Positions 6,801-64,000 of a stretch of 64,000 nucleotides of DNA are shown piece by piece. Made by a program: the position numbers and the translations under genes. Source of the DNA: Macrostomum lignano. Lineage: Eukaryota. Position 1 is the stretch's first letter, and each line of letters begins with the position of its first letter. The stretch spans positions 1 to 64,000 of the forward strand of contig NIVC01000895.1 in the NCBI GenBank assembly GCA_002269645.1, read 5' to 3'. Under the pieces are notes generated by a model that had not been told where the DNA came from, did not search any database, and worked only from the letters and a program-made list of their open reading frames with translations.

Positions 6801-7312
6801 CTTTACCTGCTAGGATCACCACTTTACCTAGTAGGATCACCACTTTACCTGGTAGGATCACCACTTTACCTGGTAGGATCACCACTTTACCCGGTAGGAT
6901 CGCCACTTTACCTGGTAGGATCACCACTTTACCTGGTAGGATCACCACTTTACCCGGTAGGATCACCACTTTACCCGGTAGGATCACCACTTTACCCGGT
7001 AGGATCACCACTTTACCCGGTAGGATCACCACTTTATCTGGTAGATTCACCAATTTACCTGAAAGAATCACCACTTCACCTCGTAGAATCACCACTTCAC
7101 CTCGTATAATCACCACTTCAGCTGGTAGAATCACCACAACTTCACCTGGTAGAATCACCACTTCATCTGAAAGAATCACTACTTCACCTGGTAGAATCAC
7201 CACTTCACCTGGTCGAATCACCACTTCACTGGTAGAATCACCACTTCACCTAGTAGAATCACCAATTCACCTGGTAGAATCACCACTTCACCTGGTAGAA
7301 TCACCACGAAAC
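3895..7312. repeat. 21-bp minisatellite (ACTTTACCTGGTAGGATCACC) with a roughly 1-kb higher-order period
   Basis: Direct reading; a diverged marker block recurs at about 5074, 6064 and 7033. Confidence 0.97.
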
Positions 7313-26604: not shown

Positions 26605-29600
26605 TCAGCTGCGACTGAGTCAGTAGCAAGGAGAAAGCACCGGTGACTGAGACAGTAGCAAGGAGAAAGCACCGGTGACTGAGACTGCAGCAAGGAGAAA
26701 GCACCGGTGACTGAGACAGTAGCAAGGAGAAAGCACCGGTGACTGAGACTGCAGCAGGGAGAAAGCACCGGTGACTGAGACTGCAGCAAGGAGAAAGCAC
26801 CGGTGACTGAGACTGCCGCAAGGAGAAAGCACCGGTGACTGAGACAGTAGCAAGGAGAAAGCACCGGTGACTGAGACTGCAGCAAGGAGAAAGCACCGGT
26901 GACTGAGACTGCAGCAAGGAGAAAGCACCGGTGACTGAGACTGCCGCAAGGAGAAAGCACCGGTGACTGAGACTGCCGCAAGGAGAAAGCACCGGTGACT
27001 GAGACTGCCGCAAGGAGAAAGCACCGGTGACTGAGACTGCAGCAAAGAGAAAGCACCGGTGACTGAGACTGCCGCAAGGAGAAAGCACCGGTGACTGAGA
27101 CTGCAGCAAGGAGAAAGCACCGGTGACTGAAACTGTAGCAAGGAGAAAGCACCGGTGACTGAGACTGCAGCAAGGAGAAAGCACCGGTGACTGAGACTGC
27201 AGCAAGGAGAAAGCACCGGTGACTGAGACTGCAGCAAGGAGAAAGCACCGGTGACTGAGACTGCAGCAAGGAGAAAGCACCGGTGACTGAAACTGCCGCA
27301 AGGAGAAAGCACCGGTGACTGAGACAGTAGCAAGGAGAAAGCACCGGTGACTGAGACAGTAGCAAGGAGAAAGCACCGGTGACTGAGACTGCAGCAGGGA
27401 GAAAGCACCGGTGACTGAGACTGTAGCAAGGAGAAAGCACCGGTGACTGAGACTGCAGCAGGGAGAAAGCACCGGTGACTGAGACTGTAGCAAGGAGAAA
27501 GCACCGGTGACTGAGACAGCAGCAAGGAGAAAGCACCGGTGACTGAGACAGCAGCAAGGAGAAAGCACCGGTGACTGAGACAGCAGCAAGGAGAAAGCAC
27601 CGGTGACTGAGACAGCAGCAAGGAGAAAGCACCGGTGACTGAGACAGCAGCAAGGAGAAAGCACCGGTGACTGAGACAGCAGCAAGGAGAAAGCACCGGT
27701 GACTGAGACAGCAGCAAGGAGAAAGCACCGGTGACTGAGACAGCAGCAAGGAGAAAGCACCGGTGACTGAGACAGCAGCAAGGAGAAAGCACCGGTGACT
27801 GAGACAGCAGCAAGGAGAAAGCACCGGTGACTGAGACAGCAGCAAGGAGAAGCACCGGTTACTGAGACTGCAGCAAGGAGAAGCACCGGTTACTGAGACT
27901 GCAGCAAGGAGAAAGCACCGGTTACTGAGACTGCAGCAAGGAGAAAGCACCGGTGACTGAGACAGCAGCAAGGAGAAAGCACCGGTGACTGAGAAAGCAG
28001 CAAGGAGAAAGCACCGGTGACTGAGACAGCAGCAAGGAGAAAGCACTGGTGACTGAGACTGCAGCAAGGAGAAAGCACCGGTGACTGAAACTGCCGCAAG
28101 GAGAAAGCACCGGTGACTGAGACTGTAGCAAGGAGAAGCACCGGTGACTGAGACTGCAGCAAGGAGAAAGCACCGGTGACTGAGACTGCAGCAAGGAGAA
28201 AGCACCGGTGACTGAGACTGCCGCAAGGAGAAAGCACCGGTGACTGAGACTGCCGCAAGGAGAAAGCACCGGTGACTGAGACTGCCGCAAGGAGAAAGCA
28301 CCGGTGACTGAGACTGCAGCAAAGAGAAAGCACCGGTGACTGAGACTGCCGCAAGGAGAAAGCACCGGTGACTGAGACTGCAGCAAGGAGAAAGCACCGG
28401 TGACTGAAACTGTAGCAAGGAGAAAGCACCGGTGACTGAGACTGCAGCAAGGAGAAAGCACCGGTGACTGAGACTGCAGCAAGGAGAAAGCACCGGTGAC
28501 TGAGACTGCAGCAAGGAGAAAGCACCGGTGACTGAGACTGCAGCAAGGAGAAAGCACCGGTGACTGAAACTGCCGCAAGGAGAAAGCACCGGTGACTGAG
28601 ACTGCAGCAAGGAGAAAGCACCGGTGACTGAAACTGCCGCAAGGAGAAAGCACCGGTGACTGAGACTGTAGCAAGGAGAAGCACCGGTGACTGAGACTGC
28701 AGCAAGGAGAAGCACCGGTTACTGAGACAGCAGCAAGGAGAAGCACCGGTTACTGAGACAGCAGCAAGGAGAAGCACCGGTGACTGAGACAGCAGCAAGC
28801 AGAAGCACCGGTGACTGAGACAGCAGCAAGGAGAAGCACCGGTGACTGAGACTGCAGCAAGGAGAAAGCACCGGTGACTGAGACTGCAGCAAGGAGAAGC
28901 ACCGGTGACTGAGACTGCAGCAAGGAGAAAGCACCGGTGACTGAGACTGCAGCAAGGAGAAGCACCGGTGACTGAGACAGCAGCAAGCAGAAGCACCGGT
29001 GACTGAGACAGCAGCAAGCAGAAGCACCGGTGACTGAGACTGCAGCAAGGAGAAGCACCGGTGACTGAGACAGCAGCAAGCAGAAGCACCGGTGACTGAG
29101 ACAGCAGCAAGCAGAAGCACCGGTGACTGAGACTGCAGCAAGGAGAAAGCACCGGTGACTGAGACAGCAGCAAGGAGAAAGCACCGGTGACTGAGACAGC
29201 AGCAAGGAGAAAGCACCGGTGACTGAGACAGCAGCAAGGAGAAAGCACCGGTGACTGAGACAGCAGCAAGGAGAAAGCACTGGTGACTGAGACTGCAGCA
29301 AGGAGAAAGCACCGGTGACTGAAACTGCCGCAAGGAGAAAGCACCGGTGACTGAGACTGTAGCAAGGAGAAGCACCGGTGACTGAGACTGCAGCAAGGAG
29401 AAGCACCGGTTACTGAGACAGCAGCAAGGAGAAGCACCGGTTACTGAGACAGCAGCAAGGAGAAGCACCGGTGACTGAGACAACAGCAAGCAGAAGCACC
29501 GGTGACTGAGACAGCAGCAAGGAGAAGCACCGGTGACTGAGACTGCAGCAAGGAGAAGCACCGGTGACTGATACTGCCGCAAGGAGAAGCACCGGTGACT

Positions 29601-30023
29601 GAGACAGCAGCAAGCAGAAGCACCGGTGACTGAGACAGCAGCAAGCAGAAGCACCGGTGACTGAGACTGCAGCAAGGAGAAGCACCGGTGACTGAGACAG
29701 CAGCAAGCAGAAGCACCGGTGACTGAGACAGCAGCAAGCAGAAGCACCGGTGACTGAGACTGCAGCAAGGAGAAAGCACCGGTGACTGAGACAGCAGCAA
29801 GGAGAAAGCACCGGTGACTCAGACTGCAGCAAGGAGAAAGCACCGGTGACTGAGACAGCAGCAAGGAGAAAGCACCGGTGACTGAGACAGCAGCAAGGAG
29901 AAAGCACCGGTGACTGAGACTGCAGCAAGGAGAAAGCACCGGTGACTGAGACAGCAGCAAGGAGAAAGCACCGGTGACTGAGACAGCAGCAAGGAGAAAG
30001 CACCGGTGACTGAGACAGCAGCA
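26605..30023. repeat. 31/32-bp minisatellite (GAGACTGCAGCAAGGAGA(A)AGCACCGGTGACT)
   Basis: Direct reading; the 32-bp form dominates the left part and the 31-bp form is frequent on the right. Confidence 0.96.
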
Positions 30024-45820: not shown

Positions 45821-47488
45821 TTAAAACTGGATAGCAACCAGCTTCTTGGACCAGGCTTCATCAGACTCGGCACAGTCCAGCATGAACTTGGCCACGTTAG
45901 CCCTGGACATTCGTCTGTCAGCAGCTTCCGGCACGAATTGCCCTTCGGCAGCTTTCAACTCTCTCTGCTCGTCCAGCGGCTCATTGGTTAAACCTGGCGG
46001 CTTCACCACGGTGAAGTTGATGTCGGAGCACTGTTCAGTCAGGTGACACTCAGCGCGCCAAAAGTCGTCCATGTTTCGGCCGATTAGAAGCGGCTTGATC
46101 AGCCATTCGACCAGCTTCGGGTGCTCGGGACGATAGACGGTGCACTGCGCTGTCAGCAGGATGAACCGGGACACCTTGGCTGATCGCATGGCTGTCACGA
46201 TTGCTGGCACAGCGTCCGTCATCAGGTCGATGCGGAACAGGCTGACTGTGGCGCCCAGGGCTGACAGAACCGCGTCGCAGCCTGCGGATTTCAACATGTA
46301 GGAAGCAAAGCTGGAGCATCTGAGATCTGAGCATGATGCACATTGCACCACTCATGACTTACGACCCGGTCTGTCTATGACCTAAACTGTCGATGAACCA
46401 AACTTTCTATGAACCAAACTGTCTATGACCTAAACTATCTATGAACCAAACTGTCTATGACCTAATCTGTTTATGATCTAAACTGTCTATGACCTAAACT
46501 GTCTATGACCTAAACTGTCTATGACCTAAACTGTCTATGACCTAAACTGTCTATGACCTAAACTGTCTATGAATCAAACTGTCTATGAACCAAACTGTCT
46601 ATGACCTAAACTATCTATGACCTAAACTGTCTATGACCTAATCTGTCTATGTTATAAACTGTCTATGACCTAAACTTTCTATGACCTAAACTGTCTGACC
46701 TAAACTGTCTATGACCTAAACTGTCTATGACCTAATCTGTCTATGACCTAAACTGTCTATGACCTAAACTGTCTAGGCTCCTGTGTGAGTGTGTGCCTGC
46801 GTACGTATCCGCGCGCTTGTATGCCTGCTCAGGGGAGTCGGCGGAATGGGCAGTAATGCCTCTCGCCGGTTGTGTGCCTATGTCGCTTAAAGTGCGCCAG
46901 GTTGCACACAACCCCCCTGCCTCTAATAAAAAAAACTGTCTATGACCTAAACTGTCTATGACCTAAACTGTCTATGACCTAAACTGTCTATGACCTAAAC
47001 TGTCTATGACCTTAACTGTCTATGACCAGATCTATCAATTACCGAATCTATTTTATGACCAATGAATAATTTTAAGCATGCATAAATCTATTTATGATCG
47101 AACCTATCAATGACGAAATCTATCTATGAACAAGTTTTTTATGACCAATTGTATCAATCGTCAAATCTATTTTTCCAAATCTATTTATGACCAAATGAAT
47201 GAGCAAGTCTTTGACCAAATCTACCCAACCAAACACAGCACAAGCTATACAGAAAATCAACCAACCATCGAAGGCCTCAGCCAGAAGTTTCTGCTCGGCC
47301 TCTCCAGCGGCAGCCGACATGTCAGGCACCTGTTTGACTGTCAGGCCAGGCTGTGTCAGCCTGTCAGAGCCCAGCTTATCCGGGCTGCGGACCACAGCGA
47401 CCACCTGGTGGCCCCTGGCAAGTGCCTGATCTACCAGCAGCAACCCAGTGGGGCCCGTGGCTCCCAGGATGGCAAGCTTCATCGCCAT
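45821..47488 (-). CDS. BLVRB: Flavin reductase/biliverdin reductase B-like, copy 1 (intact); exons 47488-47266, 46281-45821
   Basis: KLAILGATGPTG (GxxGxxG), GHQVVAVVRSPDKL, GCDAVLSALG and FTVVKPPGL...MSRANVAKFML. Phase-1 GT..AG intron. Confidence 0.85.
46372..47030. repeat. 16-bp minisatellite (CTATGACCTAAACTGT) in the copy-1 intron
   Basis: Direct reading; interrupted by a SINE fragment. Confidence 0.93.
46776..46935 (+). mobile_element. 5'-truncated SINE copy with A-tail inserted in the satellite
   Basis: Matches the 3' part of the 24113 element (about 24310-24475) and ends in AATAAAAAAAA. Confidence 0.75.
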
Positions 47489-47694
47489 TTTATATCAGAT
47501 TTAAGAAAAAAATTAGAGTTTATTGACTGATTAGCTGAACGTAGGGCTTCGATTTGATGGAGTTCGTCTGCAGCAGAGTTGCATGAATTGGTTAGTTAAG
47601 CCGAGCAAGCATTTAGAAATTGTTTTGCATTTTTTTAAATCGAAAGGTGAATTTACTGGTTTAATCGGTTCATGAACGAATCTTATCGTACGAC

Positions 47695-48725
47695 TGACTG
47701 TCTATGACCGAATCTGTCTATAACCTAATCTGTCATGACCGAATCTGTCTATGACCTAATCTGTCTATGAACTAACCTGTCTATGAACGAACTTGTCTAT
47801 GACCGAATCTGTCTATGACCTAATCTGTCTATGACCGAATCTGTCTGTGACCTAATTTGTCTATGACCTTATCTGTCTATGAACTAACCTGTCTATGACC
47901 TAATCTGTCTATGACCTAATCTGTCTATGACCTAATCTGTCTATGACCTAATCTGTCTATGAACTAACCTGTCTATGAACTAACCTGTCTATGAACGAAC
48001 TTGTCAATGAACGAATCTGTCTATGACCTAATCAGTCTATGACCGAATCTGTCTGTGACCTAATTTGTCTATGAGCTTATCTGTCTATAAACTAACCTGT
48101 CTATGACCTAATCTGTCTATGACCTAATCTGTCTATGACCTAATCTGTCTATGACCTAATCTGTCTATGACCTAATCTGTCTATGACCTAATCTGTCTAT
48201 GACCTAATCTGTCTATGAACTAACCTGTCTATGACCTAATCTGTCTATGACCTAATCTGTCTATGACCTAATCTGTCTATGACCTAATCTGTCTATGAAC
48301 TAACCTGTCTATGAACTAACCTGTCTATGAACGAACTTGTCAATGAACGAATCTGTCTATGACCTAATCAGTCTATGACCGAATCTGTCTGTGACCTAAT
48401 TTGTCTATGAGCTTATCTGTCTATAAACTAATCTGTCTATGACCTAATCTGTCTATGACCTAATCTGTCTATGACCTAATCTGTCTATGACCTAATCTGT
48501 CTATGACCTAATCTGTCTATGAACTAACCTGTCTATGACCTAATCTGTCTATGACCTAATCTGTCTATGACCTAATCTGTCTATGAACGAACCTGTCTAT
48601 GACCTAATCTGTCTATGACCTAATCTGTCTATGACCTAATCTGTCTATGAACTAACCTGTCTATGACCGAATCTGTCTATGACCTAATCTGCGTGTGACC
48701 TAACCTATCTATGACCCAACCTGTC
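47695..48725. repeat. 16-bp minisatellite (CTATGACCTAATCTGT) between copies 1 and 2
   Basis: Direct reading; higher-order duplication of about 335 bp. Confidence 0.93.
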
Positions 48726-48954
48726 TATCTGGCTCAACATGTACTTATTAAATGAGAGCGATAAATCTGTTTTTGCAGTAGGGTAAACGATTTAAAAAGT
48801 CGACAAACAGCCGAATTTCTCATATATAAAAAAGGCCTATGATTGATGACAACTAAAATCGAAATTAAATAATAATAATCATTACGGTCTATTGTTATTG
48901 TGACCTGATAAAAAATTGGCATTAACTGAAAAATCAATGAATATATTCAGTTCA

Positions 48955-49969
48955 TTAGTACTGGATAGCCACCAGCTTCTTGGACCAGGCTTCATCAGAC
49001 TCGGCACAGTCCAGCATGAACTTGGCCACGTTGGCTCTAGGTACGTAAAGCTCCGAAGCATCCGGTACGAATTGCCCTTCGGCAGCCTTCATCTCTCTCT
49101 GCTCGTCCAGCGGCTGGTTGGACAAACCTGGCGGCTTCACCACGGTGAAGTTGATGTCGGAGCACTGCTCATTCAAGTGACACTCGGGACGGTAGACGGT
49201 GCACTGCGCTGTCAGCAGGATGAACCGGGACACCTTGGCTGATCGCATGGCTGCCACAATTGCTGGCACAGCGTCCGTCATCAGGTCGATGCGGAACAGG
49301 CTGACTGTGGCGCCCAAGGCTGACAGAACCGCGTCGCAGCCTGCGAAAGTTTGATAGTAACAAACCATGCGACACATATTACTACGAGTAGTAGAAGCAT
49401 TAAGTAAATATATTAAGAAAAGCTAAAAGCATACGATTGATGATCTTTGAGGAAGAATCCCTAGTTGGGAAGAATCCAGGTAGTGTTGGAAATTAGAATC
49501 CCTTAGCTTTGTGGAAGAATCCTTTAACCTAGTGTTGGGAAGAATCCCTTAGCGTTGGGAAGAATCCCTTAGTCTTGGGAAGAATCCCCTTAGTGTTGGG
49601 AAGAATCTCTTTTAATTTTGGGAAGAATCCCCTTAGTGTTGGGAAGAATCCCTTTTAATTTTGGGAAGAATCCCCTTAGTGTTGGGAAGAATCCCTTTTA
49701 ATTTTGGGAAGAATCCAGCTAGTCGGGAAGAAGCTGAGCCACATACCCTCGTAGGCCTCAGCCAGAAGTTTCTGCTCGGCCTCTCCAGCGGCAGCCGACA
49801 TGTCAGGCACCTGTTTGACTGTCAGGACAGGCTGTGTCAGCCTGTCAGAGCCCAACTTATCCGGGCTGCGGACCACAGCGACCACCTGGTGGCCCCTGGC
49901 AAGTGCCTGGTCTACCAGCAGCAACCCGGTGGGGCCCGTGGCTCCCAGGATGGCCAGCTTCATCGGCAT
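48955..49969 (-). CDS. BLVRB: Flavin reductase/BLVRB-like, copy 2, with an in-frame 25-aa deletion; exons 49969-49747, 49340-48955
   Basis: Same exon structure as copy 1, but exon 2 is 386 bp instead of 461 bp and lacks HPKLVEWLIKPLLIGRNMDDFWRAE. Confidence 0.75.
49455..49725. repeat. Minisatellite of about 20-22 bp (GGGAAGAATCCC core) in the copy-2 intron
   Basis: Direct reading. Confidence 0.88.
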
Positions 49970-51447
49970 CTTGTTGGCACTTGAAGAAAAGTACTTTTAT
50001 TTAATTGCTGCTTTTATTTATTGAATTTCTCGAGGCAAAAGTGGCTTCACTGAAAAATCGACAGCTCATGTTGATTCACAGAGGCCGCGTTTAAGCAATC
50101 AGTTTACATTAGCAGGTGGTTTACTCAAATTATGTTATGTTTTAAGCAGTTTTATAGTTAGATTTAAAAAATTCCATGACAACTCCAGCTGAGGCTTAAG
50201 CGGTGAATAGAATGTCAGCCATGACCATGTGTGAACATTAAGTTAAAGGTTATATGTACACGTCAATCCATTAATTTTTGTATATGAGCGTATGAATTAG
50301 ATATTCCCATGATATGTAGCGATTTGGCGCCGCAGCTCAGTGTTAAACTGCACATGCCTGATTAGAAAGCCAGGACCGCTGTACACCCGGTGTGATTGTG
50401 TGCATGAGTGCGTGTGCCTGCGTGCAGTATTGCATCACATTGCAGGTTATTGGACAATGTGCCTTCAGCAATTTTTGTTATAAACGATAAGTTTCCAATC
50501 CAGATGTCATCATTTTGACTCCATGATCAAGCAATAGAAAACTCCTTAAAACTTCTCTAATAATGTCAATCGTACGCTCTGATGAAAGCAGAAAAGAAAC
50601 ACAACATAAAATACGAAATATTGTATCAATTTATTAAATGTAAACAAATTAACAATATCTATTTATGTTGCTTTAATTCGCAGATAAATTTATTAGAAAA
50701 AAAACATTTTTGTCAATGAATTATGCTAAAAAAATATCCGTCGATCAAAATATTTCATAAATGTAAAACGTTTTCATTGGTAGAAAAAAATTATAAAGAA
50801 TCAAATTTTGTAAATTGCATAATTAAATCAAACACCAATAAATCAAAGTTGACTGTTTCTGCAGAACATTTTTTCTACTAGAAGACGTAAAAACTGTTCA
50901 GAACTGGATAGCCACCAGCTTCTTGGACCAGGCTTCATCAGACTCGGCACAGTCCAGCATGAACTTGGCCACGTTGGCCCTGGAAATTCGCCTGTCAGTA
51001 CCTTCGGGCACGAACTGACCTTCGGCAGCCTTCACCTCTCGCTGCTCGTCCAGCAGCTCATTGGTTAAACGGGGCGGCTTCACCACGGTGAAGTTGATGT
51101 CGGAGTACTGCTCATTCAAGTGACACTCGGCACGCCAGAAGTCCGCCAGATTCCGACCAATAAACAGCGGCTTGACCAGCCATTCGACCAGCTTCGGGTG
51201 CTCGGGACGGTAGACGGTGCACTGCGCTGTCAGCAGGATGAACCGGGACACCTTGGCTGATCGCATGGCTGCCACAATTGCTGGCACAGCGTCCGTCATC
51301 AGGTCGATGCGGAACATGCTGCCCGGAGCGCCCAAGGCTGACAGAACCGCGTCGCAGCCTGCGGATTTCAACATGTAGGAAGCAAAGCTGGAGCATCTGA
51401 GATCTGAGCATGATGCACATTGCACCACTCATGACTTACGACCCGGT

Positions 51448-53252: not shown

Positions 53253-55956
53253 TTAATCAGAATCGGAATCGAACTTCTTGCTTTTATTGCCGTCGCCGGT
53301 GTCCGTCGACATTCGCGGCTTCTTGTTGAACGGCGCTCCGTCCTCGCCGCCGCCGAAACGTTTGCCGCCTCCCCCGAAGCCGCCGCGACCTCCGCGGTCG
53401 CCGAAGCCTCCACCGCGACCTCCTCGACCGCCTCCTCGGTCACTGAAGCCACCGAAGCCGCCGCGACCTCCGCGGTCGCCGAAGCCTCCACCGCGACCTC
53501 CGCGACCTCCTCGACCGCCTCCCCGGTCACCGAAGCCACCGAAGCCGCCGCGACCTCCTCCGCGACCTCCAAATCCACCGCCGCGGCCGCCGCCCTCTTT
53601 GGGCGGTCGGTCATCGCGATATTCCAGCCGGATCTGACGCCCGTCTAGAGACAGCGAAGCGTTGTCCGACATCGCTTTAGTGGCTGCTTCGTCCTGATAG
53701 GGTTAAATGCAGAACTAGACAGTGAGACTGTTTTTTTAGTTCTAGGTCAAGGTTAATATTGAGAAGTTTCGACTGGAGTAAACAAGTAAACAGACCTCCA
53801 AGACAGGTGAGAGACAGACTCTCTCAGACAGGTGAGAGACAGACTCTCCAAGACAGGTGAGAGACAGACTCTCCCAGACAGGTGAAAGACAGACTCTCCC
53901 AGACAGGTACGTGAGACAGACTCTCCCAGACAGGTACGAGAGACAGACTCTCCCAGACAGGTGAGAGACAGACTCTCTCAGACAGGTGAGAGACAGACTC
54001 TCCCAGACAGGTGAGAGACAGACTCTCCCAGACAGGTGAGAGACAGACTCTCTCAGACAGGTGAGAGACAGACTCTCCCAGACAGGTGAGAGACAGACTC
54101 TCTCAGACAGGTGAGAGACAGACTCTCTCAGACAGGTGAGAGACATACTCTCTCAGACAGGTGAGAGACAGACTCTCTCAGACAGGTGAGAGACAGACTC
54201 TATCAGACAGGTGAGAGACAGACTCTCTCAGACAGGTGAGAGACAGACTCTCTCAGACAGGTGAGAGACAGACTCTCTCAGACAGGTGAAAGACAGACTC
54301 TCTCAGACAGGTGAGAGACAGACTCTCTCAGACAGGTGAGAGACAGACTCTCTCAGACAGGTACGAGAGACAGACTCTCCCAGACAGGTGAGAGACAGAC
54401 TCTCTCAGACAGGTGAGAGACAGACTCTCCCAGACAGGTGAGAGACAGACTCTCTCAGACAGGTGAGAGACAGACTCTCTCAGACAGGTGAGAGACAGAC
54501 TCTCTCAGACAGGTGAGAGACAGACTCTCTCAGACAGGTGAGAGACAGACTCTCTCAGACAGGTGAGAGACAGACTCTCTCAGACAGGTGAGAGACAGAC
54601 TCTCTCAGACAGGTGAGAGACAGACTCTCTCAGACAGGTGAGAGACAGACTCTCTCAGACAGGTGAGAGACAGACTCTCTCAGACAGGTGAGAGACAGAC
54701 TCTCTCAGACAGGTGAGAGACAGACTCTCTCAGACAGGTGAGAGACAGACTCTCTCAGACAGGTTAGAGACAGACTCTCTCAGACAGGTGAGAGACAGAC
54801 TCTCCAAGACAGGTGAGAGACAGACTCCCAGACAGGTGAGAGACAGACTCTCTCAGACAGGTGAGAGACAGACTCTCTCAGACAGGTGAGAGAGAGACTC
54901 TCTCAGACAGGTACGAGACAGACTCTCTCAGACAGGTACGTGAGACAGACTCTCCCAAACAGGTGAGAGACAGACTCCCAGACAGGTGAGAGACAGACTC
55001 CCAGACAGGTACAAGACAGACTCTCCCAGACAGGTGAGAGACAGACTCTCCCAGACAGGTGAGAGACACTCTCCCAGACAGGTACGTGAGACAGACTCTC
55101 CCAGACAGGTGAGAGACAGACTCTCCCAGACAGGTGAGAGACAGACTCTCCCAGACAGGTGAGAGACAGACTCTCCCAGACAGGTGAGAGACAGACTCTC
55201 CCAGACAGGTGAGACAGACTCAAAACTGGTAGCTTACGGTCTCAAAGGTGACAATAGCGAATCCCTTGCTGCGTCGATCCTGATCCTTGGGTATGAACAT
55301 GTCGCTAGCCTCGGGAAAGTGCTCTCGCAGCGAGTCTGTTGTAGCGCTAAACGGCAGATTAAACACGCCAATAGTTTTAGTCTGAGGCTTGTTCGAGTTG
55401 CCTGGCAACTGTCTCTGCGGTGCAAACCGAATCCCAATCTCGCGGCCGTCCATCTTACTGGCCGAGCCGAATCGATCGAATGCGTCCGAGCAGGCTTGCT
55501 CAGATTCGAATTCAACAAAACAGGCGCCGAATTCTTGACCGGGCCGAGCCTTGGCCGAGTAGCGAACTCCGCCGGGGAAAGCAGTTCGAATACTGTCCGA
55601 CGAGTCGCGACCGCAGGCCTCGGCTGGCAGGTTGGTGAGCATTAGGGTGCGAGTCTGGCCGCGCAACTCCGACTGGTCGGAGGCTTTGCTTGCTGGCGAC
55701 GGCGACGAGGACTTCTGAGTTTTTTTATAGGACAGAGGAGGGTCGGGATGTTTGCCGGTTACAGAACAAGAAATGCCGAGAAAATCAAAAGCGACAGTCG
55801 ATAAGCAACAAGCAGAGGCGGAGGTCGCAGTAAGTCGCCATGCCAATAATTAGACAGACAGACAGAAAGGCAGACAGGCAAGCAGGACAGAAAGACAGAA
55901 ACTAAAACAGACAGACACACTAAAACAGACAGACAGGCAGGACAGACAGACAGATT

Positions 55957-58195: not shown

Positions 58196-58988
58196 ATTCG
58201 CAGATATTAACAAATGAAAAATGCTTTTTTAGAAAAACAGAATTCAATAATATTATTTTTTAATTTTGTTTATGCGATAGTTTTGTTGAAAAACAATTTA
58301 TCTGTAATTGACTTAAATATTTAAAAAGAAGGCAAAACCAACACAGATCAAAGGGAATACTGTATAAATGAATAATGTGGAGACTGTCACAGTTATATAA
58401 AAAATCACAGCACCAATTACTACTGAAAAAAATTTTTTTTGCTAAAATTTTCGTAGCAGAAAATATAAAGAGCAAAATATGATCAAGTTCCGTGAATATA
58501 ATATATGAATTTTCTGAAAGAGTTTCTCATGAGCCAAAAAACATAGTTCTGTTAAAATTGCCTTTTTTACATAAACAAAATAATATTGTGATGGCATGCT
58601 ACGCTGAATAAATACTGTTCAAATGTGTTTTCTGTAACTTTAGAAGACTTAACTTAAAAAAAAACTTTGGAAAACAACAAAATGAGCGACTGATGCGCAT
58701 GTTTTGCAGATGAAACGATAGGAGCTCTTCAGAACTTTGACAAGTTACTCTAATTGGCCAAGCTTAGCGTAGGGGGCCTTATGTAAGTGTATCTGTATCG
58801 GAAACTTTGATCTCTAGTCTAAAATCATAAAATTTCTTTTTGTAAACTAAGCGTTGCGTAGAGAGCCTCATTGCGTCATTACTCATCAAAAGATATTCTA
58901 ATTAGCTTGACTTTACGTAGAGAGCCTTCTGTACCCCAAGAGAAATAACCGACAGCCCCAACACACCGTAGTCTAATAAAACAATCAA

Positions 58989-61900
58989 TCATTCTAGTTG
59001 GCTAAGTCTAGCGTAGAGAGCCTCATAGAATCGCCTCTGTTCGGCTTTAGACACCCTGGCAAGGCTGCTGCGCTCCTTGGGTAATCTTCCAAGTCGTTTG
59101 CCCAAGCCCATCAGCGCCTGCGCACCATTACTAATAACCGGAATACGATCAACGATGCCTTCCCAAAGAAGGCCGCGAGCACAGATGACGTCGCAATGAT
59201 CCCAGTGCTTGGTGACAGATTGTGCTACTGAAGCCATTGACTCGGTATACCAAATGCCTCGTTGATTTTTTTCCGAATCGTGCTCGCCATTGTTGGTGGA
59301 AGATTTAGCTAAAATAGTAAAAAGTTTTCTTCTAAGTTATATTGACCTAAATATTATAAATTCAATTAGATAGCCAGCTAACGTAGAGAGCCTTAAATTA
59401 GCGGAGCTAAGCATAGTATAAATCGTGCTATTTAAACTAAACAGATGCCTCTTGAACAAAAATCGAGAAAACTTTTTTATCAAGCCTACGTAGAGAGCCT
59501 CAAATCAGCTGAGCAATTTAAACGTAGAGAGCCTTAAGTTAAGTTAAAACGTAGAATTAATCAAACTTTTAATATTCCAGGCAGTCTTGTAAATTTAAAA
59601 GCTGTGAAACAAAGCACTATAAATTCAAGTAACCTAGCAAATTTACCCCGTAGAGAGCCTCAAAATATAGGTTCAGTAAACTTAGTAGTAATAAGAACAA
59701 CTGATTCTGGGGGAGCCTTGCCAAATGAAAGGTAAAGAACCACAATCAGCAAAACAGTCTAAAAATTAATTGAGACTCAAACGTAGACAGCCTCAAAAAT
59801 CGATGGGTAAACTTAGTAATATTAGTTTTCTGGCAAAAGATAAGATCCTCAAACTCCTTCCAACCTAGAATCTAGACAAATAACGTGAAAACTAAAACGT
59901 ACCGGACTTGTCAGCAGCGTTCGCGGCGGATTCTTCCGGCACGGACAGACAAACCATTGTCCTAGGCAGAGGGCCAGAAGGCGACATTTGACTCGCTAGC
60001 GGCACTAAACCGTCGCTAATTTGCCAGTCACGTGACCAGGACCAGCCGGGGGCATGGCGGAAAATTTGCGATTCCGCATATACAGGTAAGGCCCGGCCAT
60101 GAAGGTCTTCACCTGCGATTGGGGCGTGGAATAGTGGGCTGGTTGTACAGTCACGACAATGACATTTGGACTGAATAATAGTGTGAGGAGGGTAAACGAC
60201 AGGGGATGCGGATAAATGACATGGGGTTAGGAGGGTAAATTACAGGGGTCTGGGGGTAAATGACGGATGAGAAGGGCTTGTCGGGGTCTCATGTTAAGTA
60301 AGAAGGCTGCACACGAACCAACAACAAATATCCCTATAAGTAGTCACCTGTGTATACGTAGAGCAAGACGCAGTATAGCTCAGATAATAAGTATTCGGAA
60401 AATCAGGCACCAGAGCGTTGAACTTTTCGCACGATTGCAACGTTAAATCGTAGGCTAGATTGTCTTCTCCTAGTAGGAAACCGCTTTCCGACATGCGCTG
60501 TCGTAACCGATTGAAATCGGAAAAATCGTCCTGTGGATAGTGTGTCGGTTCAAGAGAACTGGCTTCGACTAACGGTAATTGTAAACAGATTCTACACTAA
60601 GTGGAAGCACGACTCCAGGAGTGATACAATAAGACAAAGAAGAACATAAGACACAGTGACAGAAGTGAGTGACCAAATAACCGAGTTAAACAAGGACACA
60701 ACAATACCGGATTAAGACAGGTAAGGGAAGAATGATAGCTCATGTCTAGAGCATTAAAATAGCAGACTCACTTGGCTAATATTAAAGTGCTCCAATTTCC
60801 ATAACAACATGCGCCGTCTCTCATTAACGGGAAATCCAAACGCCGCGCCAAGAGTATCAACCATGCTAATTAAAGGTACAATATTGGACAGTCCAAATAG
60901 GCCGGTTTCAACATTGCAACCGGCTAAATAAGACGCCGTTGAACCGTTCATTGGCGCCATAATGCAGGTGACTGATTTCACCCACGATGCATTCGTACCC
61001 CGATCCCAGAAGTCCAATTGGAGCAGGTGCTGCAGTTGGCGAATTGTATTACCGCCAGCCGAGTGACCCACAAAGTGCAACGGTCGGTCCTCGCTCCACC
61101 AGGGATATAGCGGCTTGTCGGAGAAGTCGCGACCGTATCTGTACCAGTTGTGCGAAAGACAAGAGGTTTCTTTTATCTGTCTATTTGATACTGCGTATGC
61201 TTTGCTTTTCCTAAGGGGTGAACAACTGTATGCAAAATCTACAGCATTTTTCCCGTCGATCGCGGAGTGTCCTGGATGTCCGTCTGTCTTCTATCTGTCT
61301 GCCTGTCTGTATGTGGTGTGATGTTTGCGTGTGAGGATGGGCCTTTGCACTTGTTTGTTATTCCTTTAGTTGGTCACGTGCTTTTTGTATGTGTGGCTGT
61401 GTACGTTTTAACCTCTGCCCCTCAGGGGCGAGTCATTTGTATTCTAATTCGTAATTCTATAGTCGGCATTTTATAAATTGAATGCCATTGATCATTAATG
61501 CCAAATATGCTTCGTTTATTTTGTCCTATATTCTCGGCTATTACATTGGTGGCAGCGGTGGAATTCAAACCCACGCCATTTCGGACAGTGTCTGTATCTG
61601 TAACTTTAGTTTCTTTTCTTTTGTAACTTTAATTCTGTCCCCGTTAGCTCTATAAAGTGCCGCGTGCAGTCCTACATTCAGCCAGTCAGTGCAAAGTTGC
61701 TTACTTAGACTGAGTTCTCAGTCAACAAGCACCATAAGCCACCCGCTCACCTATCGTGCCGGTGAGTCAAACTGTGCTGCTCTCCATAATCAACCCGACA
61801 GCCGACAATCTGGGCGAACAATTCACAAGCTCGATCGTGATAAGAACTAATTGGACCAACCGATGCTTCCAATACTAGCAGGCCGTGAAAATTTGTGTCC

Positions 61901-62985
61901 CGATCAATCGCAGTCTCCCAATAGTGCACTCGACCTTTCGGTGTGAGCATCTCGTCGGGCCCAAAGCCAAATAGACCGTGAACTAGCACCACAGGCGGCT
62001 GAGTGCAGTCACGAAGCTGCTCAAGCGTCGGACGCACCGGGACAATGTCAGTGAGCGGCTGTGGCTCTGCACCCCCTCTGGACTGCGACGATGAATCGCC
62101 AAACAGAGGATCGGCTTTGTGACGAATCTCTGAGAAACTAGACAAACTATAGCTAACCGCTGCCCAAAGATGCGCACCTGAACGCTTTCTATAAGACTCG
62201 GACGATTGGTTTGAGCTAGGAGCTCGATTTGGATCAGGGTTTGAATCTTGAGTAAAACCCAGGTTCGAATTTTGTGTCATGCCTGGGTTCGAATCTTGCA
62301 TCAAGCCTGGGTCTTGCATCGTGCCCGGGTTCGAATCTTGCATCAAGCCTGGGTCTTGCATCATGCCTGGGTTCGAATCTTGCATCATGTCTGGGTTCGA
62401 ATCTTGCATCATGTCTGGGTTCGAATCTTGCATCAAGCCTGGGTTCGAATCTTGCATCAAGCCTGGGTCTTGCATCGTGCCCGGGTTTGAATCTTGCATC
62501 AAGCCTGGGTTCGAATCTTGCATCAAGCCTGGGTTCGAATTTTGTGTCATGCCTGGGTTCGAATCTTGCATCATGCCTGGGTTCGAATCTTGTGTCATGC
62601 CTGGGTTCGAATCTTGCATCATGCCTGGGTTCGAATCTTGCATCAAGCCTGGGTTCGAATCTTGCATCAAGCCTGGGTTCGAATCTTGCATCATGCCTGG
62701 GTTCGAATCTTGCATCATGTCTGGGTTTGAATCTTGCATCATGTCTGGGTTCGAATCTTGTGTCATGTCTGAGTTCGAATCTTGTATTAAGTCCGGCTTC
62801 GATTCCCTATTTGAACTAATCTGCGGAGGCGGCGGTCTTGGAGGAGGCTGTCGGACAATTTGCGCCGATGATGAAGAATTAATTAATGGCGCTGGTGCGG
62901 CCGTAACGATGCTATTTTGATTTATATCTGATGTTTCAGTTTCCGTTTGCAAGATTATTTCTGATTCTTCCGTCTCTGCTGACAT
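58989..62985 (-). CDS. Lipase of the Geobacillus/Staphylococcus (family I.5/I.6) type with a repetitive N-terminal extension; exons 62985-61751, 61138-60772, 60530-60348, 60170-59903, 59308-58989
   Basis: VVLVHGLFGFG, SVGPISSYHDRACELFAQ, VDYGEQHSLTHRH, HFVGHSAGG (Ser), VTCIMAPMNGST, AYDLT...PNTYYLSY, WQISDGLVP (Asp), RGIW, WDHCDV (His) and FYEALYARL. All four introns are GT..AG with consistent phases 2, 0, 0 and 1. Confidence 0.88.
61550..61590 (-). pseudogene. tRNA-Leu 3'-half remnant in lipase intron 1
   Basis: The reverse strand reads GGCGTGGGTTTGAATTCCACCGCTGCCA, versus eukaryotic tRNA-Leu GGCGTGGGTTCGAATCCCACCGCTGCCA. No D-arm or anticodon half is visible. Confidence 0.6.
62235..62810 (-). 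repeat. In-frame 24/18-bp repeat encoding (QDSNPGxM)n in the lipase N-terminus
   Basis: All unit lengths are multiples of 3 and the frame stays open into the lipase core. Confidence 0.85.
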
Positions 62986-63165
62986 GTCTTTATTGTTTTT
63001 TACATACGACGTAAATACTGCGTTAATTGTGCATTAATTAGTAGTTGACAATGATGCTCTCAAGGCGAATCTGAAAGTCAATAAATTGAACTAAAATCAA
63101 TAATGGGATGTCTCTCCTTAAGGTAGGGCTATTTTAAATTAGCTATATTTTTCATTGACATAGAC

Positions 63166-63787
63166 TATCGCTTTTGACTCTCTAGATAAGACTTTAGACA
63201 TTCAAAATAAGACTGCATAGGATCGCAAGCAAGGCCAGGCTAGCCACGGCCAGAGCATGCCCAGTCTTGGCTGCAGGAATGGCTTGGCCATAGACTAAAA
63301 AATGGAATATCAAAATGAGAATAAGACGCTCAATATGAGACCGGGAGTGAACGTAATTTATTTGCTTTTTGGCAGTCACCATACAAACAGCTAAGGAGAA
63401 ATTAGGCAATAAACAAGAAGCAGAATTTGAGCGGCAGCTAGGATGGTTGATCCATTGTTTACTGCGTCGATCAGACGTTGACGGTCTGCTGCAGGAATCG
63501 ATGGTGCCATCACAGTGAAATCCAAGGGGTCAGATGCAACCCAAGGGGTGAAGAAGGAGAGCTGGCTGAAGGTCAGAGGGTTAGAGCGATATCTGAAGGC
63601 TTTCACACTCAGTCTCATATTGAGCGTCTTATTCTCATTTTGATATTCCATTTTTTAGTCTATGGCCAAGCCATTCCTGCAGCCAAGACTGGGCATGCTC
63701 TGGCCGTGGCTAGCCTGGCCTTGCTTGCGATCCTATGCAGTCTTATTTTGAATGTCTAAAGTCTTGTCTAGAGCGTCAAAAGCGATA
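63166..63787. mobile_element. Internally deleted TIR transposon (IS630-Tc1-mariner-like) with arms of about 175-185 bp
   Basis: Near-perfect inverted repeats 63166-63341 and 63612-63787, with TA at both outer ends. The spacer encodes an HTH-like start MAPSIPAADRQRLIDAVNNGSTILAAAQIL on the - strand (63510-63421). Confidence 0.75.
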
Positions 63788-64000
63788 CTAATAATTACTT
63801 ATACTATAGTCACGTAACAAAAAACAACAAAAGAAATATTGGTAATGCATATTAATTTGGCAGTTTGTATTTGTTTCAATTTCTTACCGGTATAAAATAG
63901 CAAGTAATTAATAGTAGAAATGCTTTTAAATAAAATGAAAAGTAGCATAATAACAAGTAAACCTATAATTCAACAAGATTGTAATTTTTACGAAGGCTTA

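What the first reader, a model, noticed from the sequence alone, without database searches (positions are those of the whole stretch)
58989..62985. Intron-containing lipase of the bacterial thermoalkalophilic type: horizontal transfer candidate
Seen: complete Ser-Asp-His triad motifs plus residues matching the family's zinc site (D in HDRAC, two H in QHSLTHRH, D in AYDLT), split by four canonical introns. Known: this architecture defines Geobacillus/Staphylococcus family I.5/I.6 lipases. I recall relatives in plants, fungi and oomycetes, but not as a standard animal lipase family. Inference: an old, domesticated horizontal acquisition or a rare retention. The introns and the animal neighbour (nucleolin) argue against contamination.
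Basis: partly seen in the sequence, partly recalled or inferred. Interest (0 to 1): 0.75.

Follow-up and report, generated by a model that had tools for sequence, protein, structure and literature searches.

The report
Bacterial-type zinc lipase gene in flatworms
A flatworm (Macrostomum lignano) gene with four introns encodes a lipase whose nearest relatives are bacterial; related genes occur in schistosomes but in no other named animal, so it looks like an ancient bacterium-to-flatworm gene transfer.

Summary
On the minus strand, 62985-58989, five exons joined by four GT-AG introns encode about 790 aa. The protein has a 300-aa low-complexity N-terminus and a PF24708 (Lip_C) lipase domain. The Ser-Asp-His triad and the D/H/H/D zinc ligands of family I.5/I.6 lipases are all present.

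The window is 100% identical to Macrostomum lignano contig NIVC01000895.1 and carries ordinary animal genes, so this is not contamination.

The gene is not unique to Macrostomum. M. lignano has at least three diverged paralogues. One is intronless and also lies just upstream of a nucleolin-like gene. Schistosomes carry single-exon relatives (S. mansoni Smp_037780), and three unidentified samples join the same clade.

PF24708 is also widespread in fungi, oomycetes, plants and unicellular Holozoa. The flatworm genes do not group with those. HMM scores, distance quartets and a home-made likelihood placement (weight 0.94-0.999) all put them with a purely bacterial subgroup (Methylocystis, Chloroflexia and others).

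Best reading: one ancient bacterium-to-flatworm transfer, then duplication, with introns and an N-terminal repeat gained in this copy.

Caveat: the annotated exon-4 acceptor gives a frameshift in this assembly.

No prior report was found. Moderate interest.

The parts
58989..62985 (-). Whole lipase gene, from start codon to stop codon: five exons and four GT-AG introns
   Evidence: It corresponds to the public models P0001 and P0002. It is 100% identical to M. lignano contig NIVC01000895.1.
61751..62985 (-). Exon 1. It encodes the low-complexity N-terminus (about aa 1-300), then the start of the lipase domain with the oxyanion HG (H336, 61978-61980) and three zinc ligands: D384 (61834-61836), H404 (61774-61776) and H410 (61756-61758).
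   Evidence: residue equivalence to T1 lipase
62262..62784 (-). 24-bp tandem repeat, 22.5 copies at 85% match, inside exon 1. It encodes the octapeptide repeat MQDSNPG(M/L). This repeat is absent from paralogues, schistosome relatives and bacterial relatives.
61139..61750 (-). Intron 1 (612 bp, phase 2, GTGAGC...ACAG). It splits HRHD|RYGRDF, which is continuous in intronless homologues. It contains a (TGTC)n microsatellite.
60772..61138 (-). Exon 2, with the nucleophile elbow GHSAGG (S438 at 61060-61062)
60531..60771 (-). Intron 2 (241 bp, phase 0, GTGAGT...CACAG)
60348..60530 (-). Exon 3, with the fourth zinc ligand D562 in AYDLT (60447-60449)
60171..60347 (-). Intron 3 in my model (177 bp). 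The annotated alternative acceptor at 60113/60112 would make it 235 bp.
59903..60170 (-). Exon 4, with the catalytic Asp D648 in SDGLV (60012-60014). With the alternative acceptor at 60112, the reading frame depends on a G-run at 60046-60052.
59309..59902 (-). Intron 4 (594 bp, phase 1, GTACGT...TTTAG, 33% GC). It holds five copies of the CGTAGAGAGCCT motif.
58989..59308 (-). Exon 5, with the catalytic His H722 in WDHCD (59196-59198), and the family-conserved C-terminus Q..FYEALYARLSQLE followed by the stop codon
53253..57721 (-). Downstream neighbour on the same strand: a nucleolin-like gene with an acidic/Ser-rich N-terminus, an RRM and a Gly/Arg-rich tail, carrying introns. Its paralogue lies in the same position next to the intronless lipase paralogue on another contig.

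Best explanation
**What the gene is.** It is a nuclear gene of the flatworm Macrostomum lignano. It encodes an alpha/beta-hydrolase lipase/esterase of the Lip_C (PF24708) family. It probably acts inside the cell, because it has no signal peptide.

**How the enzyme most likely works (inferred from homology; no activity was tested).**
- Ser438 in the GHSAGG elbow attacks the ester carbonyl.
- His722 and Asp648 activate Ser438.
- The backbone amides around the HG motif stabilise the oxyanion.
- Four ligands (D384, H404, H410, D562) hold a structural zinc ion. In family I.5 lipases this zinc braces the sub-domain that carries the lid.

**Where it came from (inferred).**
- A bacterium carrying an uncharacterised subgroup of this family donated the gene. 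Today that subgroup is found in Methylocystis, Chloroflexia, Gammaproteobacteria, Nitrospirales, Planctomycetota and others.
- The recipient was an early flatworm, living before the Macrostomum and schistosome lineages split.
- The gene then took on host base composition and duplicated in Macrostomum. One duplication copied the lipase together with its nucleolin-like neighbour.
- In this one copy it acquired four spliceosomal introns and a repetitive, probably disordered, N-terminal extension.
For: **Family membership**
- Pfam PF24708 scores 107 bits against a cutoff of 27.
- A profile of the domain aligns end to end with T1 lipase 2z5g at E 2.5e-73. The triad and the four zinc ligands fall in register.
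- The AlphaFold model has pLDDT 78 and pTM 0.84.
- The 43 best Foldseek matches are all I.5/I.6-type lipases (target-normalised TM 0.60-0.68). The next matches are 12 orders of magnitude weaker.
- Triad and zinc residues are conserved across the flatworm clade.

**A real host gene**
- The window is 100% identical to M. lignano contig NIVC01000895.1.
- The neighbours are animal-type genes: RRM/nucleolin-like, Mab-21, UPF0489, glutaredoxin and SDR.
- GC is 51% and GC3 is 51%, within the range of neighbouring genes.
- Paralogue P0004 (42-44% identity) on contig NIVC01002832.1 is an intronless ORF. It also lies directly upstream of a nucleolin-like gene that is 49% identical to the window's.

**Other flatworms**
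- Relatives occur in Trichobilharzia, S. mekongi, S. curassoni, Heterobilharzia, S. mansoni (Smp_037780) and S. rodhaini, on chromosome-scale records.
- The S. mekongi gene is a single exon.

**Bacterial affinity**
- After the Macrostomum sequences, the best hits in an exhaustive search of 1.84 billion representatives are metagenomic sequences of about 390 aa that fall in the bacterial subgroup. They score 281 bits, against 218 bits for the best named non-flatworm eukaryote.
- The nearest hits sit in gene-dense contexts rich in toxin-antitoxin genes and transposases.
- Eighty loci lie in named bacterial genomes or MAGs.
- In an NJ tree of 346 sequences the flatworm clade has bootstrap 0.78. 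All 84 other eukaryotic sequences fall on the opposite side.
- Macrostomum, P0127 and P0314 score 50-85 bits higher on the bacterial-subgroup HMM than on the eukaryote HMM. Held-out Holozoa, plants and oomycetes do the reverse by 40-110 bits.
- In distance quartets, Macrostomum pairs with the bacterial subgroup in 71% and with eukaryotes in 14%. The Holozoa control pairs with eukaryotes in 80%.
- In the likelihood placement on a 32-taxon backbone, summed weight is 0.94-0.999 inside or at the stem of the bacterial subgroup. The best eukaryote-side edge is 10-18 lnL units worse.
Against: - Deep nodes are weak in the NJ trees (bootstrap 0.23-0.30). An earlier Kimura-distance tree with fewer taxa put the flatworms near eukaryotes.
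- The likelihood placement used my own code, a BLOSUM62-derived rate matrix, a fixed NJ backbone and 339 columns. It is not a full ML search with topology tests.
- Schistosome sequences are so diverged that the HMM and quartet tests are neutral for them.
- The family does exist in unicellular Holozoa, so vertical descent with many losses cannot be formally excluded.
A non-flatworm animal homologue could have been missed.
- Three members of the flatworm clade (P0127, P0135, P0314) come from unidentified samples.
- No expression or splicing data were available.
- With the annotated exon-4 acceptor, this copy is frameshifted in this assembly.
- Lack of a signal peptide was judged by eye only.
Confidence: 0.65

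Rival explanations
1. Vertical retention. The gene descends from an ancient eukaryotic PF24708 gene that was present in the holozoan ancestor. It was lost in nearly all animals and kept only in flatworms. Its similarity to bacterial sequences would then reflect slow or unusual evolution.
For: - The family is present in Ichthyosporea (Sphaeroforma, Creolimax, Ichthyophonus) and in Syssomonas, the unicellular relatives of animals. It is also present in fungi, plants and oomycetes.
- Deep-node support in the NJ trees is weak.
- One early NJ tree grouped the flatworms with eukaryotes.
Against: - Flatworm sequences never join the Holozoa.
- The HMM test, the quartets and the likelihood placement (dlnL -10 to -18 for any eukaryote-side edge) all favour the bacterial subgroup.
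- Held-out Holozoa behave as eukaryotes in the same tests.
- Macrostomum shares motifs such as EASVGP and GC(N/D)xxTGL with the bacterial subgroup and not with eukaryotes.
- This reading needs independent losses in every other animal lineage.
Confidence: 0.12
2. Transfer from another eukaryote, such as a prey organism, symbiont or parasite, that itself carried a bacterial-subgroup-type gene. A variant is two or more independent transfers into different flatworm lineages.
For: - Many database relatives are unnamed metagenomic or Logan sequences, so an unsampled eukaryotic donor cannot be ruled out.
- Monophyly of the flatworm clade has only 0.53-0.78 NJ bootstrap.
Against: - Every subgroup member whose origin could be checked is bacterial: two genomic contexts and 80 named genomes or MAGs.
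- Flatworm sequences share features beyond what the bacteria have. These are the W-DH-D-x(3)-R-x-L extension after the catalytic His, and HG changed to PG in P0003, the schistosomes, P0127, P0135 and P0314.
Confidence: 0.08
3. This particular copy is a decaying or truncated allele. This is compatible with any origin. On this reading the real transcript uses the acceptor at 60112, is frameshifted, and ends after 630 aa without the catalytic Asp and His.
For: - The NCBI model for this exact contig (P0002) has that structure.
- The stretch read from acceptor 60112 (TFMAGPYLYMRNRKF) resembles the homologous stretch of relatives (LFMMPSAFMLHKKF in P0127; my reading of the sequences).
Against: - An upstream acceptor at 60170 with a good pyrimidine tract keeps the frame open through all catalytic residues. 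That model scores the same on the family HMM.
- The near-identical UniRef model P0001 is in frame with one extra G in a short G-run. This is the kind of difference long-read assemblies often get wrong.
- Everything downstream, including the conserved C-terminus, is intact.
Confidence: 0.25
4. Bacterial contamination or a chimeric assembly.
For: The nearest non-flatworm relatives are bacterial.
Against: - The gene has four spliceosomal introns and host-like GC.
- It has a eukaryote-style repeat extension.
- It is flanked on one contig by animal genes.
- It has a paralogous lipase-nucleolin block on a second contig.
- Relatives lie on schistosome chromosomes of 65-217 Mb.
- Identity to any bacterial protein is only 33-44%.
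Confidence: 0.01

Closest known systems
Family I.5 thermoalkalophilic lipases (Geobacillus T1, L1, BTL2/P1; PDB 2z5g, 1ku0, 1ji3)
   Same: - Same Pfam family.
- Full-length profile alignment at E about 1e-71 to 1e-73.
- Same Ser-Asp-His triad.
- Same four zinc ligands in register (D61, H81, H87, D238 of L1, numbering from my own knowledge).
- Same fold, target-normalised TM 0.60-0.68.
   Different: - Only about 22-25% identity in the structural alignment.
- The elbow is GHSAG, not the AHSQG (AxSxG) that marks the Bacillus I.4/I.5 families (Arpigny & Jaeger classification, from my own knowledge).
- No signal peptide.
- Flatworm-specific insertions lie between the catalytic Asp and His, and after the His.
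- There is a 300-aa repeat N-terminus.
- In the trees it falls in a different bacterial subgroup from the Bacillus/Clostridium group.
Family I.6 staphylococcal lipases (S. hyicus SHL 2hih; S. aureus SAL2/Geh 8s9r, 6ksi)
   Same: - Same family and fold. These are among the top Foldseek hits (E 6e-24) and sequence hits.
- Same GHSxGG elbow.
   Different: - The staphylococcal enzymes are secreted pre-pro-proteins with a long propeptide.
- The profile score is lower than for I.5 (205-212 bits against about 245-250 bits).
Uncharacterised bacterial Lip_C subgroup (about 380-400 aa; Methylocystis rosea, M. suflitae, Crenothrix polyspora, Ca. Uabimicrobium, and Chloroflexia, Nitrospirales and Haliangium MAGs)
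   Same: - Nearest relatives by score, HMM test, quartets and likelihood placement.
- 33-44% identity over nearly the whole domain.
- Shared motifs EASVGP, GC(N/D)xxTGL and the Q..FY..L..RL C-terminus.
- Most start directly at the first strand, without a signal peptide.
   Different: - The bacterial genes have no introns and no N-terminal repeat.
- They lack the flatworm insertions.
- No member has been characterised, as far as I could find.
Schistosome 'Lipase' Smp_037780 (UniProt G4V647) and its orthologues in S. mekongi, S. curassoni, S. rodhaini, Trichobilharzia and Heterobilharzia
   Same: - Same flatworm clade (NJ bootstrap 0.78).
- Triad and zinc ligands are kept.
- No signal peptide.
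   Different: - About 30% identity, so very diverged.
- Single exon in S. mekongi.
- PGLPGWG in place of HGLFGFG.
- No N-terminal repeat.
Eukaryotic PF24708 clade (Ichthyosporea, Syssomonas, many fungi, oomycetes with tandem double domains, Chara and grasses, protists)
   Same: Same Pfam family and the same catalytic and zinc residues.
   Different: These form their own clade, in which the Holozoa, the land plants with Chara, and the oomycetes each form their own group. Flatworm sequences are excluded from it in every test.

Membership tests
Pfam PF24708 Lip_C (zinc-site lipases, including families I.5 and I.6) | Score above Pfam's gathering threshold | tested here: met
   107.3 bits against a cutoff of 27, E 9e-31
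Pfam PF24708 Lip_C (zinc-site lipases, including families I.5 and I.6) | Catalytic triad Ser (nucleophile elbow), Asp and His, in register with solved members | tested here: met
   S438 (GHSAGG), D648 (SDGLV) and H722 (WDHCD) align with the Ser, Asp and His of 2z5g, 8yye and 5ah1. The Asp and His are in frame only with the 60170 acceptor or a 1-nt correction.
Pfam PF24708 Lip_C (zinc-site lipases, including families I.5 and I.6) | Four zinc ligands Asp, His, His, Asp | tested here: met
   D384, H404, H410 and D562 align with WDRACE, AAH, GHARFG and RYDLS of T1 lipase. The first three are invariant in all 129 bacterial-subgroup sequences. Metal binding itself was not tested.
Pfam PF24708 Lip_C (zinc-site lipases, including families I.5 and I.6) | Three-dimensional fold | tested here: met
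   AF2 model pTM 0.84. The top 43 Foldseek PDB matches are all I.5/I.6-type lipases, E 1e-19 to 4e-24, target-normalised TM 0.60-0.68.
Family I.5 in the strict sense (Geobacillus-type thermoalkalophilic lipases) | AxSxG pentapeptide (Ala replaces the first Gly), secreted about 43-kDa enzyme, closest phylogenetic affinity to Geobacillus/Bacillus lipases | tested here: not met
   The pentapeptide is GHSAG. No N-terminal signal peptide is seen (by inspection). The gene is placed with a different bacterial subgroup from the Bacillus/Clostridium group.
Family I.5 in the strict sense (Geobacillus-type thermoalkalophilic lipases) | Thermo- and alkali-stable triacylglycerol lipase activity | not testable with these tools
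   This needs expression and an enzyme assay.
Bacterium-to-animal horizontally transferred gene | Physically integrated in the host genome next to host genes, in more than one assembly or species | tested here: met
   this contig; paralogous block; schistosome chromosomes
Bacterium-to-animal horizontally transferred gene | Phylogeny places the animal genes with bacteria, apart from other eukaryotes' homologues | tested here: met
   HMM test, quartets and likelihood placement with weight 0.94-0.999. The NJ topology agrees but with low deep support. A standard ML analysis with topology tests is still needed.
Bacterium-to-animal horizontally transferred gene | Absent from the recipient's sister lineages (other animals) | tested here: inconclusive
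   No non-flatworm animal appears among the named proteins of four searches. Only the best 120-150 hits of each search are listed, and most proteins are unnamed. Three clade members come from unidentified samples.
Bacterium-to-animal horizontally transferred gene | Domestication: host-like composition, introns, expression | tested here: inconclusive
   Composition is host-like and there are four GT-AG introns. Expression and splicing were not testable here.

The most novel reading that the evidence does not exclude
Flatworms, including the human-infecting schistosomes (Smp_037780), carry a zinc lipase captured from bacteria before the Macrostomum and schistosome lineages split. It has been kept ever since, and no counterpart was seen in any other named animal, the hosts included. 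In Macrostomum the family also records what happens after a transfer. One copy is still intronless. Another, duplicated together with its nucleolin-like neighbour, has since gained four introns and a minisatellite-encoded N-terminal tail. That would make it a dated example of intron gain in a transferred gene.
Probability: 0.55. Interest if true: 0.6.

Novelty: new member of a known kind. Interest (0 to 1): 0.5.

Why it matters
Well-supported bacterium-to-animal transfers that survive for hundreds of millions of years are few. This one would be shared by a free-living model flatworm, in which RNAi and transgenesis are available, and by schistosomes.

A bacterial-type lipase that the vertebrate host lacks would be a natural candidate for a parasite-specific function in lipid handling. 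It would also be an ordinary target to test.

The contrast between intronless and four-intron paralogues in one genome offers a clean case for studying how transferred genes acquire introns and new N-terminal sequence.

The result also shows that the Lip_C family has two separate histories in eukaryotes: an old eukaryotic clade and a separate flatworm acquisition.

Tried and rejected
- **First exon-3 acceptor (60596).** It gave an in-frame 812-aa protein. I dropped it because it inserts 22 aa that are absent from all relatives and from both public models.
- **Genome scan with a single protein.** The scan of bacterial genomes with the protein alone found nothing. It worked once an alignment was used.
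- **NJ trees with Kimura-corrected distances.** They were unstable at depth: the flatworms sat next to eukaryotes in one tree and next to bacteria in the next. I replaced them with Scoredist NJ, HMM scoring, quartets and a likelihood placement.
- **Look-ups of P0003 and P0001 loci.** These would have shown the third paralogue's gene structure or a spliced transcript. They returned nothing.
- **Introns as copies of a mobile element.** No copies were found elsewhere in the window or in the other M. lignano loci held.
- **Lipase-nucleolin synteny in schistosomes.** It could not be assessed within 6-kb flanks.
- **Organisms behind DRR639055, SRR33002330 and ERR14224706.** They could not be identified.
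- **Literature.** Five searches found no report of this gene, of Smp_037780, or of horizontal transfer of it.
- **Contamination.** Considered and rejected; see the rival explanations.


Full report
**1. What is in the sequence**

Reading 58500-64000 and translating the minus strand shows a gene that starts at the ATG at 62985 and ends at the stop at 58989-58991. These are exactly the coordinates given.

Five coding blocks joined by four GT...AG introns give one open frame. I moved the exon-3 acceptor from 60596 to 60530. The two public models of this gene use 60530, and the paralogues have no room for the extra 22 residues.

The final model has exons 62985-61751, 61138-60772, 60530-60348, 60170-59903 and 59308-58989. 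It encodes 790 aa, and the introns are 612, 241, 177 and 594 bp.

Residues 1-300 are low-complexity. They include 22.5 copies of a 24-bp repeat that encodes MQDSNPG(M/L). The remainder is a lipase domain.

**2. Which family**

- The domain passes Pfam PF24708 (Lip_C) at 107 bits against a cutoff of 27.
- It hits only family I.5/I.6-type lipases in the PDB.
- A profile built from it and its relatives aligns end to end with Geobacillus T1 lipase at E 2.5e-73. The oxyanion HG, the GHSxGG elbow, the catalytic Asp and His, and the four zinc ligands (Asp, His, His, Asp) all fall in register.
- In window terms these residues are H336, D384, H404, H410, S438, D562, D648 and H722.
- An AlphaFold model (pLDDT 78, pTM 0.84) finds the same lipases as its 43 best structural matches (target-normalised TM 0.60-0.68). 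The next matches are far weaker.

The protein is not a strict I.5 member. Its pentapeptide is GHSAG rather than AxSxG, it has no signal peptide, and it falls in another branch of the family (section 5).

**3. Whose genome**

The best database hits are Macrostomum lignano proteins. The window is 100% identical over 13,996 bp to contig NIVC01000895.1 of assembly GCA_002269645.1.

The rest of the window carries ordinary animal genes: an RRM/Gly-Arg-rich nucleolin-like gene directly downstream, Mab-21-like, UPF0489, glutaredoxin, a short-chain dehydrogenase and three tandem NmrA-like genes.

The lipase's GC (51%) and GC3 (51%) lie within the range of those neighbours. Contamination is excluded.

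**4. Relatives in flatworms**

M. lignano has at least two further, diverged paralogue groups (P0003 and P0004, 42-44% identical).

P0004 lies on contig NIVC01002832.1 as a single uninterrupted 451-codon ORF. Directly downstream, on the same strand, is an intronless nucleolin-like ORF. That ORF is 49% identical to the window's nucleolin-like gene over the RRM region. The lipase-nucleolin pair was therefore duplicated as a block long ago. One block has introns in both genes and the other has none.

An exhaustive profile search of 1.84 billion representatives, followed by cluster look-ups and a search started from the trematode hit, shows relatives in these schistosomatids:
- Trichobilharzia szidati
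- Schistosoma mekongi
- S. curassoni
- S. mansoni (Smp_037780, UniProt G4V647, annotated 'Lipase')
- S. rodhaini
- Heterobilharzia

These lie on chromosome-scale records. The S. mekongi gene is a single exon.

Three more members of the same clade come from unidentified sequencing runs (P0127, P0135, P0314). P0127 is a single ORF with AT-rich flanks.

Triad and zinc ligands are kept throughout. The exceptions are Ser to Cys in P0135, and Asp to Glu at the fourth ligand in P0127 and P0314.

**5. Transfer or retention**

The family is widespread in non-animal eukaryotes:
- oomycetes, often as tandem double domains
- many fungi
- Ichthyosporea and Syssomonas, which are unicellular Holozoa
- Chara, Digitaria and Genlisea
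- several protists

No non-flatworm animal appeared among the named hits of any search. The presence in Holozoa makes 'rare retention' a serious rival, so I tested it four ways.

(a) NJ tree. I used Scoredist distances on 346 sequences and 339 columns with 100 bootstraps. The flatworm clade has support 0.78, and Macrostomum alone has 1.0. All 84 other eukaryotic sequences lie on the other side of the midpoint root. The flatworms attach to a group of 129 bacterial-type sequences, with weak deep support of 0.23-0.30.

(b) HMM scoring. Macrostomum, P0127 and P0314 score 50-85 bits higher on an HMM of that bacterial group than on an HMM of the eukaryotes. Holozoa, plants and oomycetes, each left out of the eukaryote HMM in turn, score 40-110 bits higher on the eukaryote HMM. 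The schistosome sequences are too diverged to discriminate.

(c) Four-point quartets. Macrostomum pairs with the bacterial group in 71% of 20,000 quartets and with eukaryotes in 14%. The Holozoa control pairs with eukaryotes in 80%.

(d) Likelihood placement. This was my own implementation: a BLOSUM62-derived exchange matrix, empirical frequencies, four gamma categories, and a 32-taxon backbone in which the 15 eukaryotes and the 4 Holozoa are each monophyletic. The flatworm subtree gets a summed weight of 0.94-0.999 within or at the stem of the bacterial group. The best eukaryote-side edge is 10-18 log-likelihood units worse.

That group is genuinely bacterial. The two nearest hits sit among toxin-antitoxin, transposase and other bacterial genes. 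Eighty relatives lie in named genomes or MAGs: Methylocystis (including cultured strains), Chloroflexia, Gammaproteobacteria, Crenothrix, Nitrospirales, Planctomycetota, Haliangium, SAR324 and others.

Macrostomum also shares short motifs with this group and not with the eukaryotes: EASVGP and GC(N/D)xxTGL.

I conclude that a single old transfer from bacteria into the flatworm lineage is the best explanation, and I give it 0.65. Vertical retention gets about 0.12. Transfer through another eukaryote, or multiple transfers, gets about 0.08.

**6. Introns**

Introns occur only in the window copy. The paralogue P0004 and the S. mekongi gene are single-exon in genomic DNA, and P0127 is a single ORF on an unidentified contig. 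The simplest history is an intronless ancestor with four later gains in this copy. The alternative, loss of introns from both genes of the other block, cannot be excluded.

The introns are AT-richer than the exons (33-47% GC) and have no detectable copies elsewhere in the sequences I hold.

**7. A problem in exon 4**

The NCBI model for this contig (P0002) uses an acceptor at 60112. In this assembly that frame hits a stop after 630 aa, before the catalytic Asp and His.

The UniRef model P0001 comes from another sequence of the same species and differs by one residue elsewhere. It uses the same acceptor but implies one extra G in the GG at 60046-60047 (minus strand), which restores the frame.

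My model uses an upstream acceptor at 60170, which keeps the frame open without any change.

The two intact versions score the same on a family HMM (364.4 and 363.9 bits) against 326.5 for the truncated one. Either there is a one-base assembly error or allelic frameshift, or the upstream acceptor is the real one. Only transcript data can tell.

**8. How it probably works**

By homology, it is a serine hydrolase of lipid esters. Ser438 is activated by His722 and Asp648, and a structural zinc ion braces the lid-bearing sub-domain. It probably works inside the cell, since this protein and the other flatworm-clade members whose N-termini I examined show no signal peptide (P0314 has an extra N-terminal extension), and nor do most of the bacterial subgroup (by inspection).

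The repetitive N-terminus is specific to this paralogue and its role is unknown. None of this has been tested experimentally.

**9. Novelty**

Five literature searches found no mention of this gene, of Smp_037780, or of its horizontal origin. The library is incomplete, so this is not proof.

It is a new example of a known kind of event in a known protein family. What adds interest is its age, its presence in schistosomes, and the intron contrast between paralogues.

Noticed in passing
window 58766-59800: The 12-mer CGTAGAGAGCCT (minus strand AGGCTCTCTACG) occurs 8 times with at most one mismatch, all within 58857-59793. Chance expectation is 0.23. One copy is the coding sequence for the conserved C-terminal EALYA. 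Two lie in the 3' flank, with a further degenerate copy there, and five lie in intron 4. The 3'-flank copies extend to about 33 nt of similarity with the end of the CDS. It looks like repeated local duplication of the gene's last 35-40 bp. The meaning is unknown.
   Followed up: partly
window 63166-63351 and 63602-63787: A 186-bp inverted repeat (97% identical arms, about 250 bp apart) lies just upstream of the lipase start codon. It resembles a MITE or hairpin element.
   Followed up: no
L004 8085-14353 (M. lignano NIVC01002832.1): This paralogous block holds three consecutive single-ORF genes on one strand: uracil-DNA glycosylase, the lipase paralogue and a nucleolin-like gene. They are separated by only 0.6-0.8 kb. 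In the window, the equivalent lipase and nucleolin-like genes both carry introns. No UDG homologue is found upstream of the window's lipase.
   Followed up: partly
window 3911-7307, 8710-10778, 26613-30023, 53790-55221 and others: The window is very rich in long minisatellites: 21 bp x 161 copies, 21 bp x 98, 32 bp x 107, 25 bp x 57, and about a dozen smaller arrays. These create long spurious ORFs on both strands. The 25-bp array lies inside an intron of the nucleolin-like gene.
   Followed up: partly
window 45821-51428: Three tandem copies of an NmrA-like / NAD(P)-binding gene, each split by an intron-like gap that contains a 16-bp minisatellite (CTGTCTATGACCTAAA). The middle copy appears shortened.
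   Followed up: partly
P0135 (L006, run SRR33002330); P0003, schistosome proteins, P0127, P0314: In one unidentified member of the flatworm clade the nucleophile Ser is replaced by Cys (ICHCVG). In P0003, all schistosome sequences, P0127, P0135 and P0314, the oxyanion motif HG is PG (PGLPGWG), which is rare in bacteria (2 of 129). This may mark altered catalysis or a sub-lineage.
   Followed up: partly
P0136, P0151, P0310-P0313 (oomycete proteins): Oomycete members of the family often carry two complete Lip_C domains in tandem in one protein of 770-1010 aa.
   Followed up: no
L001 8001-12793 (ENA metagenome contig): In one bacterial contig, two Lip_C genes each follow a nucleotidyltransferase/HepT toxin-antitoxin pair, within a region dense in TA modules and transposases. 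At least some bacterial copies therefore sit in mobile, duplicated cassettes.
   Followed up: no
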